A DNA stretch of 64,000 nt from Podarcis filfolensis (Eukaryota), in assembly GCA_964270895.1 (NCBI GenBank), contig OZ185440.1; one strand, 5' to 3'. The number at the start of each line of letters is the position of its first letter. Positions within the stretch are counted from its first letter, which is position 1. Below, one piece after another: positions 43,601 to 46,600 of the stretch. The notes under the pieces were generated by a model. That model did not search any database, was not told the DNA's origin, and worked only from the letters and a program-made list of their open reading frames with translations. The position numbers and the translations under genes were made by a program.

Positions 43601-46600
43601 GTTGACTTTCATCAGCAATGTCTGTCTGGGTTCTCAGTGCACCACCAACATAGACAAGGGCTGTGGCCTATTAAGGATTCAGTCTTCCTTTACTTCACTT
43701 CCCCCTGCTGAATTTTTGTGTACACCAGTTTGGGCACCAGGGACAGATGGGGAATTCTGCTGTTGTACCAACTGCTGCCCAGCAGCCCCCATGTCTGAGC
43801 TGACAGAAGTGGTCTCAGCATGACTACTGACAACCCCCAGACTGATTGACTACTGTAATGTGTTGTACCCGGGCTTTGCCTCTGAATACTATTTGGAAAC
43901 TTCAGCTAGCTCAAAACACAGTCTCCAGACTGTTGACTAGGACCAGTCAGTTGGTGGCGGTGATAGATCTCAATGATATTGAAATAAATTCACACTGGCT
44001 TCCAGTCAATTTCTGATTACTCTTCAAAGTGCTGGTGTTTTCCTTTAAATGCCTACACAGGTTAGGTTCCTGAAGGACTTCCTGCTCCCAAAACAACCTG
44101 AGGCTGTTCTATAGTTGTCCCCGCCATCTGAGATAAGGCAGGAGTTTATGGAATTCCCTCTCCAGAAAATAATGTTGGCACTAGGCAGATTTATTGTTCT
44201 TGCTGCCTGACAAAACCATTTTTATTCTCCCAAGCTTTGTAATATACCTTAATGCATTTTTCTTTTTTAACATGTTATGTTCTATTTCCCTGTGTTTCTC
44301 TTGTTTTTGTAAATGACTCTGGAAGCTCTGCTGAAGGATGGCATATATATACATGTGTGTGTGGGAGAGAGAGAGAGAGAGAGAGAGAGAGAGAGAGAGA
44401 GGGAGAGAGAGAGAGAGAAAGGGGTAAACAAGCAACACTTACTTGTGTTGTGATGTCTCCCTGGATCACCGGATTCGTCTGTAAATATATCCCAAGTTAT
44501 AAGTACAGCAATAATTTCAGTGCAGGTAAAACAAGGACCTCAGGGCCAACAGCATGCTAAGCTAAGGGACTGGATAATACTGCAGGGATCATTGCATGCT
44601 GACTCAGGTTTGGAATACAGGAAGGAGTTTCATGCCACCACCATTAAAAGGTTCCTCAACCTTCTAATGGATCTCTTGGTTCTAAGCCTAGCAACCCCTC
44701 CCTGGGCTAACTTCATGTTACCTGTAGAACTGTTGGACTGCTGGGTTTACAGAAACTAAGGATGAGTCTGCACCATCAAAAATCATGAGTCCAGCATGAT
44801 AAGAAGGAAGTGAGAGGAACAGCCAAAGGACATGGTTTGTACCTTTTTAATCAGAGTTGGGAGTTGGATAATTTGGTGCCATCATATATTTTATTGGCAC
44901 GCCTATGCTACAAGAGCAAATTGGATCAAAGCTGCCATAACTGCCACAGTCTCTCCCAAGGAATCTTAGGAACTGTAACTATGTGTGGATATAAAAAAAT
45001 AACCTTCACAGATGTACAGTTATGATAGAAGGCTCATTTTGGGAGAAGCCGTGGCAGGAAACTTGTTTAGATTTGTAGTGCAGACGTATCCTAACACTGC
45101 AAATGTTGGCACAGTGATTCTAGTAGTGAGCACTCAGTGCATATTTAATGCACAATCAGTCCCATGGCATATTTGCAGAGCAGATCGCCTGGGTCAGTTG
45201 TGCAACAGCACACAGCCAATGCAAAACTTGTCTGTGGATTTATGCTTCTGCAAAGTAGTAAAAGCATCATTTTGAGAAAAGTAACTATTGCATTCAGACT
45301 TCAGTTTTCAGGCTGTTGGCTACAGAATCTTCAGATCTTGCTGTATCTTCTATAATGAAGCTGCACAGAACACATCGGCAAGCTGGACCAGGAATGGAAG
45401 GAAGCTATAGTGTAATCTAGATGTGCAGTGATGCACTTGCTGTGCATCAGAAACAAAAGCTGATAATTGCACTGCCAGCGCTTTGCAGGACTGTTATTTT
45501 AGTGCAACCATAAAAATGCCACTAAAGCTGTGTTAGAAGCTAGAAGCTGTTAGTTCTATGCAACAATGCCTGTACAGCACCTACAGAATGTGAAAAGAAT
45601 GTGATATATTGCTGCTAATCTTGTATGCGTATTACCCCAACCTCTTGTGACAAGCCAAAAGAAAGGCTTCTCTATTTGTTGAACATGTGAAAGGGGAGCA
45701 AATAAAAACCAGCACCCTCCCACCACCAGCATCGTCTTCTCTTGAGGCTCACAACTTTCTCTCCCTTTTCCTCCTTGATGGCAGAATCTCTGAAGACTCA
45801 TGCAGTCCACACTAACACAGCAGGGCACAGCAATATGGATTGGTCTAGGAAGGGACAAAGGGATATATGAAAGAAAAGGTTCTCCACAACAAGCTCATGC
45901 AGCTGATATTTACAATGCCATTACAGCCACCGCTTAGGCAGTACAATCCACCTCTGGAAGCAAGAATTATCTGTTAAGAGAATGAAAGAATCAGCCGAGG
46001 AATCCCACAAATGTAGTGGGAAAGTAGAGAAGTGAAAGACAGAGAGAAAGAGGGACAAGGGATGGAGGAGAAGGAAGAGGAGCCATTTTCAGGGAGGAAG
46101 AGAAGGTGGTCCACAACAATAGAAGGGTATGATGGGAGATCCTATGAGACCAACAAAGAAGAAGACAGGCAGAAAGGAATAAGGGATAAAGGATAAAGGA
46201 ATAAAGGATGCAGAGACTGATGCATGGAATGAGGACTACGAATGACTTGAACAGAGCCTAGAGTCTCCTACTGGAAACAGATTTTAAAAAGCAGCCTAGA
46301 TAAGAAAGTTCCAGCTAACAATATACTGCAATAAGCCTTAGACAAAGAAACCTACTGGAGCGTCATTGAAGGCACAGATATTCCTAGATTAGAAGCCTAC
46401 AGAAGTCTATGGCGCATGGCCAGCTACACTCAGATTCACCCACCATCAAGAGACCACTTATGAGCCAGAATTCAAATGGGGGGGTGGGTTTCAAGTGCTA
46501 TTAGACCCCTCCATAAGTTATTAGAGTTCTTAACATGTCTTTTCCCTGCAAGGAGCTCCTACAGTGATATTTCATGATCAGCTCTTTGAAGGATGGGGCT

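What the first reader, a model, noticed from the sequence alone, without database searches (positions are those of the whole stretch)
44443..44478. Candidate extra 36-nt in-frame microexon in the CaV1.1 IVS3-S4 voltage-sensor linker
Seen: between exons 29 and 30 lies TATATTTACAG|ACGAATCCGGTGATCCAGGGAGACATCACAACACAA|GTAAGT. It has a perfect donor hexamer, a CAG acceptor with a CTTATAAC branch-like motif upstream, phase 0/0, and 12 codons ([12 protein letters not shown]) without a stop. Known: skipping exon 29 in this same linker (CaV1.1e) strongly shifts activation voltage and raises current, and CaV1.2/1.3 carry short cassettes at this position. Inferred: lizards may have a second cassette giving up to four linker lengths. 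I recall no mammalian equivalent.
Basis: partly seen in the sequence, partly recalled or inferred. Interest (0 to 1): 0.75.

Follow-up and report, generated by a model that had tools for sequence, protein, structure and literature searches.

The report
Real second CaV1.1 voltage-sensor linker exon
The 36-base stretch is a real coding exon of the lizard muscle calcium-channel gene: in RNA from a closely related lizard it is spliced in where the well-known exon 29 normally sits, giving the channel's fourth voltage sensor a different 12-residue outer loop.

Summary
The sequence is exactly as described: minus strand, 44478..44443, acag|36 nt|gtaagt, phase 0, [12 protein letters not shown]. It lies in the CACNA1S intron between exon 29 (45970..45914) and exon 30 (43405..43268).

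The pattern alone means little. About 20 similar AG-open frame-GTAAGT candidates lie on this strand of the window.

RNA settles it. Reads and contigs of a close relative (about 3% diverged; 3 runs, 2 studies) give only two joints over the 5.7-kb stretch:
- exon 28 to micro-exon (48850 to 44478)
- micro-exon to exon 30 (44443 to 43405)

Both have GT..AG ends. Exon 29 is skipped in these transcripts (about 2 reads against about 14 in the deepest run). No exon 29 to micro-exon joint reached the listing threshold, so "four linker lengths" is not shown.

Exon 29 is intact. Its weak donor and two downstream TGCATG motifs are identical in a turtle, so it is probably used elsewhere, perhaps in adult muscle.

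I found no counterpart of the micro-exon in turtle or sturgeon introns. Teleost CaV1.1 isoforms do carry a second, 27-nt cassette here, but orthology is doubtful.

The effect on gating is inferred from mammalian work. I could not check whether lizard gene annotations already list this exon.

The parts
44443..44478 (-). 36-nt micro-exon ('29b'), phase 0/0, encodes [12 protein letters not shown]. The close relative has 44454 T>C on the + strand, which is codon 9 Ile->Val.
   Evidence: Sequence. Joints 44478<->48850 and 44443<->43405 in 3 runs.
44479..44510 (-). 3' splice site region: AG at 44480-44479, a weak pyrimidine tract (9/18), and the branch-like CTTATAAC at 44503-44496.
   Evidence: The joint ends read CT..AC on the + strand, which is GT..AG on the minus strand.
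44437..44442 (-). 5' splice site GTAAGT (full consensus from +1 to +6; the last exon base is A).
   Evidence: The joint lies exactly at 44443.
44365..44419 (-). (CT)n tract of about 55-70 nt starting about 25 nt downstream of the donor. It is a possible binding site for PTB-type pyrimidine-tract proteins (inference only).
   Evidence: read laying skipped 44341-44428 as a repeat.
44553..44635 (-). Three GCATG motifs at -157, -121 and -79 from the micro-exon, a position where Rbfox usually represses (inference).
   Evidence: 3 in 300 nt against a window background of 1.33 per kb.
45914..45970 (-). Exon 29 (57 nt, [19 protein letters not shown]). It is intact, with a strong acceptor and a weak donor (GTAAAT), and is almost absent from the sampled RNA.
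   Evidence: Depth 0.1 and 0.44 in its two bins. Conserved with its flanks in the turtle.
45799..45901 (-). Two TGCATG (Rbfox-type) motifs about 13 and 110 nt downstream of exon 29, identical in the turtle.
   Evidence: The review PMC12149502 states that Rbfox1 and MBNL1 promote exon 29 inclusion in mouse.
48850..48933 (-). Exon 28 (IVS3, [28 protein letters not shown]). Its donor is joined to the micro-exon.
43268..43405 (-). Exon 30 (end of the linker plus IVS4). Its acceptor is joined to the micro-exon. It starts with QAI, 9 nt more than in turtle and kiwi.

Best explanation
This is a genuine, spliceosome-used 36-nt cassette exon of CACNA1S (CaV1.1).

Shown:
- In RNA of a close relative it is joined to exon 28 upstream and exon 30 downstream, in frame.
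- In those transcripts exon 29 is left out. The extracellular IVS3-S4 loop of voltage sensor IV therefore carries 12 hydrophilic residues (one Gly, no Cys) instead of the 19-residue Gly/Cys-rich hydrophobic exon 29 peptide.

Inferred:
- In mammals this loop sets the activation voltage and open probability of the channel. Exon 29 shifts activation about +30 mV and curtails current, and linker length, flexibility and hydrophobic structure all matter. The micro-exon form is therefore predicted to gate like the exon-29-less, conducting CaV1.1e or between it and the adult form.
- Choice between the two cassettes is probably regulated. Exon 29 has a weak donor backed by two conserved downstream TGCATG motifs, which would act as Rbfox/MBNL-type enhancers in mature muscle. 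The micro-exon has a weak acceptor, a perfect donor, three upstream GCATG motifs and a downstream CU tract. This fits use where those factors are low.
- The tissues of the runs are unknown to me.
For: -: over window 43250-48950 the only joints listed are 43405->44443 (10 reads in X36, 5 in X37, one 1930-nt contig in X1) and 44478->48850 (9 reads, 4 reads, the same contig). Both have GT..AG ends on the minus strand. The reads begin at 4-10 different places.
- the libraries are stranded, with the first mate on +, as expected for a minus-strand RNA. 45 of the 47 reads laid from X36 are at least 95% alike.
- depth over the 36 nt equals about 14 reads in X36 and about 7 in X37. Exon 29 has about 2 and 0.
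- all junctions are phase 0.
- the gene is alpha-1S.
- splice-site anatomy and motifs. The exon 29 donor and both TGCATG motifs are identical in the turtle.
- (PMC5330888, PMC5279877, PMC12149502): function of the linker and Rbfox1/MBNL1 control of exon 29 in mammals.
Against: - The RNA is from a relative, not the source species, and from only two studies of unknown tissue.
- Joints under 3 reads are not listed, so 28->29, 29->30, 29->micro and 28->30 forms may exist at low level.
- The tool warns that reads resembling human DNA are dropped and that a dip in depth is no finding, so the low exon 29 depth is soft evidence.
- No constraint is visible. There is one non-synonymous change in 36 nt against about 3.5% intron divergence.
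- No counterpart was found in turtle or sturgeon.
- The gating effect and the regulators are inference only.
Confidence: 0.85

Rival explanations
1. The two cassettes are independent. Exon 29 and the micro-exon are each included or skipped on their own, so mature muscle may carry both (31 extra residues) and four linker lengths exist.
For: 29->micro->30 is in frame. 1435 nt separate the two exons, so nothing forbids joint use. In teleosts the form with both cassettes is the one most often annotated, and all four forms are on record.
Against: No 45914->44478 joint reached the listing threshold, and the one assembled contig goes 28->micro->30. With only about 2 exon 29 reads, the data cannot exclude this.
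Confidence: 0.3
2. The micro-exon is the standard exon in this lizard lineage, used in all muscle. Exon 29 is a little-used relic.
For: The micro-exon dominates in all three runs, which come from two studies.
Against: Exon 29 keeps its frame, its splice sites and about 200 nt of flanking intron. That includes its exact donor and two TGCATG motifs identical to the turtle. This argues for continued regulated use. About 2 spliced exon 29 reads are present in X36.
Confidence: 0.2
3. It is a pseudo-exon or splicing noise: a chance AG...GTAAGT open frame with no biological use.
For: Such patterns are common: 20 on this strand of the window. The acceptor tract is weak. There is no deep conservation.
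Against: It is the majority form, not a trace, in three runs, and it is built into a 1930-nt contig at depth 10.6. It preserves the frame in a loop known to be a splicing hot-spot.
Confidence: 0.03

Closest known systems
CACNA1S exon 29 (CaV1.1a versus CaV1.1e), mammals
   Same: Same gene, same IVS3-S4 loop, same phase-0 insertion point between the IVS3 exon and the IVS4 exon. It is also an alternatively used cassette.
   Different: Different exon: 36 nt against 57 nt, with no sequence likeness. The micro-exon peptide is hydrophilic, where exon 29 is Gly/Cys-rich and hydrophobic. It lies 1.4 kb further downstream and appears where exon 29 is skipped. The mammalian exon-29-less form has no insert at all (PMC5330888).
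Short IVS3-S4 cassettes of the paralogues: exon 33 of CaV1.2, exon 32 of CaV1.3 and CaV1.4
   Same: Short cassettes (CaV1.2's is 11 residues in the isoforms retrieved) at the same place, known to shift activation voltage (PMC5279877).
   Different: These are paralogous genes. I saw no convincing sequence likeness (PAEHTQCSPSM-type against [12 protein letters not shown]). Homology was not tested beyond reading the peptides.
Teleost CaV1.1 27-nt micro-exon ((A)ETNPMQAIA)
   Same: A second cassette in the same intron, phase 0, alongside an exon 29 homologue. It shares the TNP start. It is a separate exon with cag|...|gtgagt sites. The no-cassette, exon-29-only and both-cassette forms are annotated within one species, and the micro-exon-only form in another.
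   Different: It lies 87 nt from exon 30, against 1037 nt here. Likeness is weak: 2 of 281 pseudo-exon peptides and 439 of 5000 shuffles reach the same score. Its 3' half (CAAGCAATTGCA, QAIA) resembles the start of exon 30 in lizard (CAAGCC.., QAI) and sturgeon (CAAGCG.., QAE). That points to a different origin. No counterpart is annotated in the Polypterus isoforms, and none was found in the sturgeon and turtle introns.

Membership tests
Cassette exon of the CaV1 IVS3-S4 linker | Lies between the exon encoding IVS3 and the exon encoding IVS4 | tested here: met
   Exon 28 (IVS3) lies at 48933-48850 and exon 30 (IVS4) at 43405-43268. The micro-exon lies between them.
Cassette exon of the CaV1 IVS3-S4 linker | Canonical splice sites and a preserved frame | tested here: met
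   AG and GTAAGT sites, 36 nt, phase 0/0. The joint ends are GT..AG.
Cassette exon of the CaV1 IVS3-S4 linker | Junction reads in RNA on both sides | tested here: met
   9-10 reads per junction in X36, 4-5 in X37, and one contig in X1.
Cassette exon of the CaV1 IVS3-S4 linker | Alternative use: transcripts both with and without it | tested here: inconclusive
   About 2 spliced exon 29 reads in X36 hint at other forms, but no joint that bypasses the micro-exon reached the 3-read listing threshold.
Cassette exon of the CaV1 IVS3-S4 linker | Changes the voltage dependence of activation | not testable with these tools
   Needs electrophysiology. Inferred from PMC5330888 and PMC5279877.
Mutually exclusive exon pair (exon 29 / micro-exon) | The two exons are never joined to each other and never both skipped | tested here: inconclusive
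   No 29->micro or 28->30 joint was listed, but depth is low and the tissues are unknown.
Mutually exclusive exon pair (exon 29 / micro-exon) | The two exons are homologous (tandem duplication) | tested here: not met
   The peptides [19 protein letters not shown] and [12 protein letters not shown] and their lengths (57 against 36 nt) show no likeness.
Orthologue of the teleost 27-nt CaV1.1 micro-exon | Same intron and phase | tested here: met
Orthologue of the teleost 27-nt CaV1.1 micro-exon | Sequence likeness beyond chance | tested here: inconclusive
   A shared TNP(V/M) start. The score is reached by 0.7% of pseudo-exon peptides but by 8.8% of shuffles.
Orthologue of the teleost 27-nt CaV1.1 micro-exon | Present in lineages in between | tested here: not met
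   No like exon in turtle intron 29 or in sturgeon. Polypterus isoforms differ only by exon 29.
Intronic pseudo-exon | Not used in mature RNA | tested here: not met
   It is the majority form in three runs.

The most novel reading that the evidence does not exclude
Lizards evolved, or uniquely kept, a second IVS3-S4 cassette that takes the place of exon 29 in a developmental or tissue switch. Their 'exon-29-less' CaV1.1 would then be not a bare short linker, as in mammals, but a third linker type with its own gating. A deeper version is that a two-cassette linker (exon 29 plus a TNP.. micro-exon) is ancestral for bony vertebrates and was lost in turtles, birds and mammals.
Probability: 0.3. 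Interest if true: 0.7.

Novelty: new member of a known kind. Interest (0 to 1): 0.6.

Why it matters
The IVS3-S4 loop of voltage sensor IV decides whether the muscle calcium channel conducts current or acts almost purely as a voltage sensor. In mammals this rests on one exon, exon 29, whose mis-splicing contributes to muscle weakness in myotonic dystrophy.

A natural second cassette, short, hydrophilic and free of cysteines, used in place of exon 29, is a ready-made test of competing ideas about this loop. Those ideas are that length, flexibility or hydrophobic structure sets the activation voltage. It also shows that the 'embryonic-type' channel need not be the same in all vertebrates.

The limits are that it is one more cassette in a known splicing hot-spot, that it was seen in lizards only, and that automated gene annotations, which I could not reach, may already list it.

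Tried and rejected
1. Sequence statistics as proof were rejected. One search shows the motif pattern is common.

2. I looked for annotated lizard isoforms that carry the peptide. The word search accepts only proteins 0.55-1.75 times the query length, and no long lizard query could be given by reference. The three searches and the representative search returned fish, turtle, shark, gecko and snake fragments. None was a full-length lizard CaV1.1, and no retrieved protein holds a micro-exon word. This is a blank of reach, not of absence.

3. Snake locus L001 (Protobothrops): only 1 kb lies upstream of exon 30 and there is no match. Inconclusive.

4. Kiwi L003 and a bird RNA contig L005 hold too little upstream DNA.

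5. Frog gene: its range is too long, so no DNA was returned. P0093 is not on record.

6. Origin from a dispersed repeat: intron 29 has no second copy in the window.

7. I considered whether the QAI at the start of lizard exon 30 is a remnant of the teleost micro-exon. Turtle and kiwi lack it, and the snake has LPAI, which fits a squamate acceptor shift. But sturgeon exon 30 also starts CAAGCG (QAE). This stays open.

8. Run X15 (another species) laid only on a short repeat at 43877-43909 and gave nothing on the exons.

9. Papers: searches for CaV1.1 with exon 29 and IVS3-S4, for zebrafish, and for microexon found no description of a second CaV1.1 linker cassette.

Full report
**Observation**

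On the minus strand the window reads tttacag|36 nt|gtaagt at 44478..44443. The 12 codons are stop-free ([12 protein letters not shown]), and a CTTATAAC branch-like motif ends 17 nt before the AG.

- Exon 28 ends at 48850 (..VILSQID|gtaagt).
- Exon 29 is 45970..45914 (57 nt, [19 protein letters not shown]).
- Exon 30 begins at 43405 ([21 protein letters not shown]..).

All boundaries are phase 0. The exon 30 translation matches solved alpha-1S chains best (E about 2e-21), ahead of alpha-1D and alpha-1C. A tblastn with a full-length fish CaV1.1 lays exons from residue about 418 to the C-terminus along the minus strand. The gene is therefore CACNA1S, and the stretch lies in the intron that interrupts the IVS3-S4 linker. 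The only N run of the window is at 4267-4409, far from here.

**Is the pattern more than chance?**

It is not. Scanning the window for AG + stop-free 3n (9-90 nt) + GTAAGT gives 20 candidates on the minus strand and 10 on the plus strand. With GTRAGT the counts are 39 and 19. The acceptor tract of the candidate is poor (9 of 18 pyrimidines). On sequence alone this would be an ordinary pseudo-exon.

**RNA evidence**

- No run of the source species is on record as RNA. The best DNA holders, organism E, hold 0.75-0.82 of the sampled words. A relative, organism A, holds 0.36-0.37, which corresponds to about 3% divergence.
- A second search with exon 30 alone found transcript-like contig sets and raw stranded RNA-seq of organism A.
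- I laid one contig set (X1) and two raw RNA-seq runs (X36, X37) of organism A on window 43250-48950, together with a contig set of another species (X15).
- Only two joints were listed. The first is 43405->44443, skipping 1037 nt: 10 reads in X36, 5 in X37, one contig in X1. The second is 44478->48850, skipping 4371 nt: 9 reads, 4 reads, the same contig.
- Both joints have CT..AC ends on the plus strand, which is GT..AG for a minus-strand RNA. Both runs are stranded the way a minus-strand transcript predicts.
- The X1 contig is 1930 nt long at depth 10.6 and carries exon 28, the micro-exon and exon 30 in one piece.
- Six further X36 reads end loose just inside the exon 30 acceptor. Their loose letters start with the micro-exon sequence.
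- Converting bin depth to reads, the 36 nt are covered by about 14 reads in X36 and about 7 in X37. Exon 29 is covered by about 2 and 0.
- The relative differs at 44454 (T>C on the plus strand). This changes codon 9 from Ile to Val.

The exon is therefore real, and in these samples it is the main form, joined 28->micro->30 with exon 29 left out.

Caveats:
- The tissues are unknown to me.
- Joints under three reads are not listed.
- The tool warns that human-like reads are dropped and that a dip in depth is no finding.
- Contigs drop rare variants.
- All support comes from one related species and two studies.
- X15 gave nothing on the exons.

**Exon 29 is not a relic**

A lizard-turtle comparison (Terrapene locus L002) conserves these blocks:
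- exon 28
- exon 30
- a 230-nt block in intron 28
- exon 29 with about 95 nt upstream and 115 nt downstream

In the alignment, the last 33 nt of exon 29, the weak donor GTAAAT and the next 12 nt, ending in TGCATG, are identical. So is a second TGCATG about 110 nt downstream.

The review PMC12149502 states that Rbfox1 and MBNL1 promote exon 29 inclusion in mouse. The conserved motifs fit the same control here.

The micro-exon has the opposite anatomy:
- a weak acceptor and a perfect donor
- three GCATG motifs within 160 nt upstream (background 1.33 per kb)
- a (CT)n tract from about +25 downstream

A reciprocal switch would use exon 29 where Rbfox and MBNL are high and the micro-exon where they are low. 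This fits the anatomy but is inference.

**Likely function**

In mammals, exon 29 inserts 19 residues in this loop. It shifts current activation by about +30 mV and cuts open probability, by disturbing the contact of an IVS3 aspartate with the outer IVS4 arginines. The structure and hydrophobicity of the insert matter, not only its length (PMC5330888). Chimera work shows that longer and more flexible, glycine-rich IVS3-S4 loops shift activation to more positive voltages (PMC5279877).

The micro-exon peptide is shorter (12 residues), has one glycine and no cysteine, and is hydrophilic. I therefore predict a channel that activates at more negative voltages and conducts more than the exon 29 form. 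It would be close to, or somewhat right of, the insert-less CaV1.1e. This was not tested here.

**Relatives**

The protein searches could not reach full-length lizard CaV1.1, because candidates must have 0.55-1.75 times the query length. I therefore cannot say whether lizard annotations already contain this exon.

The searches did show that teleost CaV1.1 has two cassettes at this place:
- Sander lucioperca alone has isoforms with no insert, with the exon 29 homologue (SALAASGGLYCLHGCA), and with that plus ETNPMQAIA.
- A turbot protein has ETNPLQVIA alone.

A fish genomic contig shows that the 9-residue piece is its own 27-nt exon (cag|...|gtgagt), 87 nt upstream of exon 30.

The lizard micro-exon shares the TNP start. 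The score of this likeness is reached by 2 of 281 pseudo-exon peptides but by 439 of 5000 shuffles.

Evidence against orthology:
- Turtle intron 29 has no like exon and no nucleotide match.
- Sturgeon has none either.
- Polypterus isoforms differ only by exon 29.
- The 3' half of the teleost exon (CAAGCAATTGCA) looks like the first codons of exon 30 in lizard (CAAGCCATA) and sturgeon (CAAGCGGAG).

I put orthology at about 0.2. The exon is more likely young, arising in lizards or squamates. The only squamate loci I could reach were too short (snake) or had no DNA on record (gecko protein P0161, which joins SQID directly to PPTTGNEENGRISIT).

**What is known**

The papers found describe only exon 29 as the alternative exon of this loop in CaV1.1. 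None mentions a second cassette.

**Verdict**

The relation to exon 29 (replacement or independent), the tissue pattern, the age of the exon and its effect on gating remain open. It is a new member of a known kind: a further cassette in the CaV1 IVS3-S4 splicing hot-spot. I left out no step for safety reasons.

Noticed in passing
window 48148-48373 (minus strand), intron 28; turtle L002:5647-5869: A block of about 230 nt in intron 28 is conserved between lizard and turtle (64.5% in blastn, 79% mean column identity in MAFFT). It has no open frame. It holds an inverted-repeat-like ATATACACC(A/G)GAGTATATT....ATATACC and an invariant TTGCCTCATGGT. It may be a splicing control element or an RNA structure for the exon 29 region.
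   Followed up: partly
window 43397-43405 (minus strand); L001:1147-1158; L002:13558; L003:631: Exon 30 starts 9 nt earlier in this lizard (QAI) and 12 nt earlier in the pit viper (LPAI) than in turtle and kiwi, which start at D. Sturgeon exon 30 also starts CAAGCG (QAE), so the extension may be old rather than a squamate acceptor shift.
   Followed up: partly
proteins P0218-P0337, L004:301-327: Teleost CaV1.1 genes, both the a and b copies, are annotated with up to four IVS3-S4 linker forms. These are built from an exon 29 homologue and a separate 27-nt micro-exon ((A)ETNPMQAIA) 87 nt upstream of exon 30. I found no paper describing this.
   Followed up: partly
window 44341-44428: A (GA)n/(CT)n microsatellite lies directly downstream of the micro-exon donor. 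The reads tool skipped it as a repeat. Its length may vary between individuals and could affect splicing of the micro-exon.
   Followed up: no
window 43877-43909: Two contigs of another species (run X15) match only this 33-nt piece of intron 29 and run on unlike on both sides. It is probably part of a dispersed repeat.
   Followed up: no
protein P0177 (Malaclemys terrapin) versus P0160 and P0172: One turtle gene model extends exon 29 upstream (VISLADSLVLSTGGLYCL..) compared with the usual TFLASSGGLYCL... This is either an alternative acceptor or a model error.
   Followed up: no
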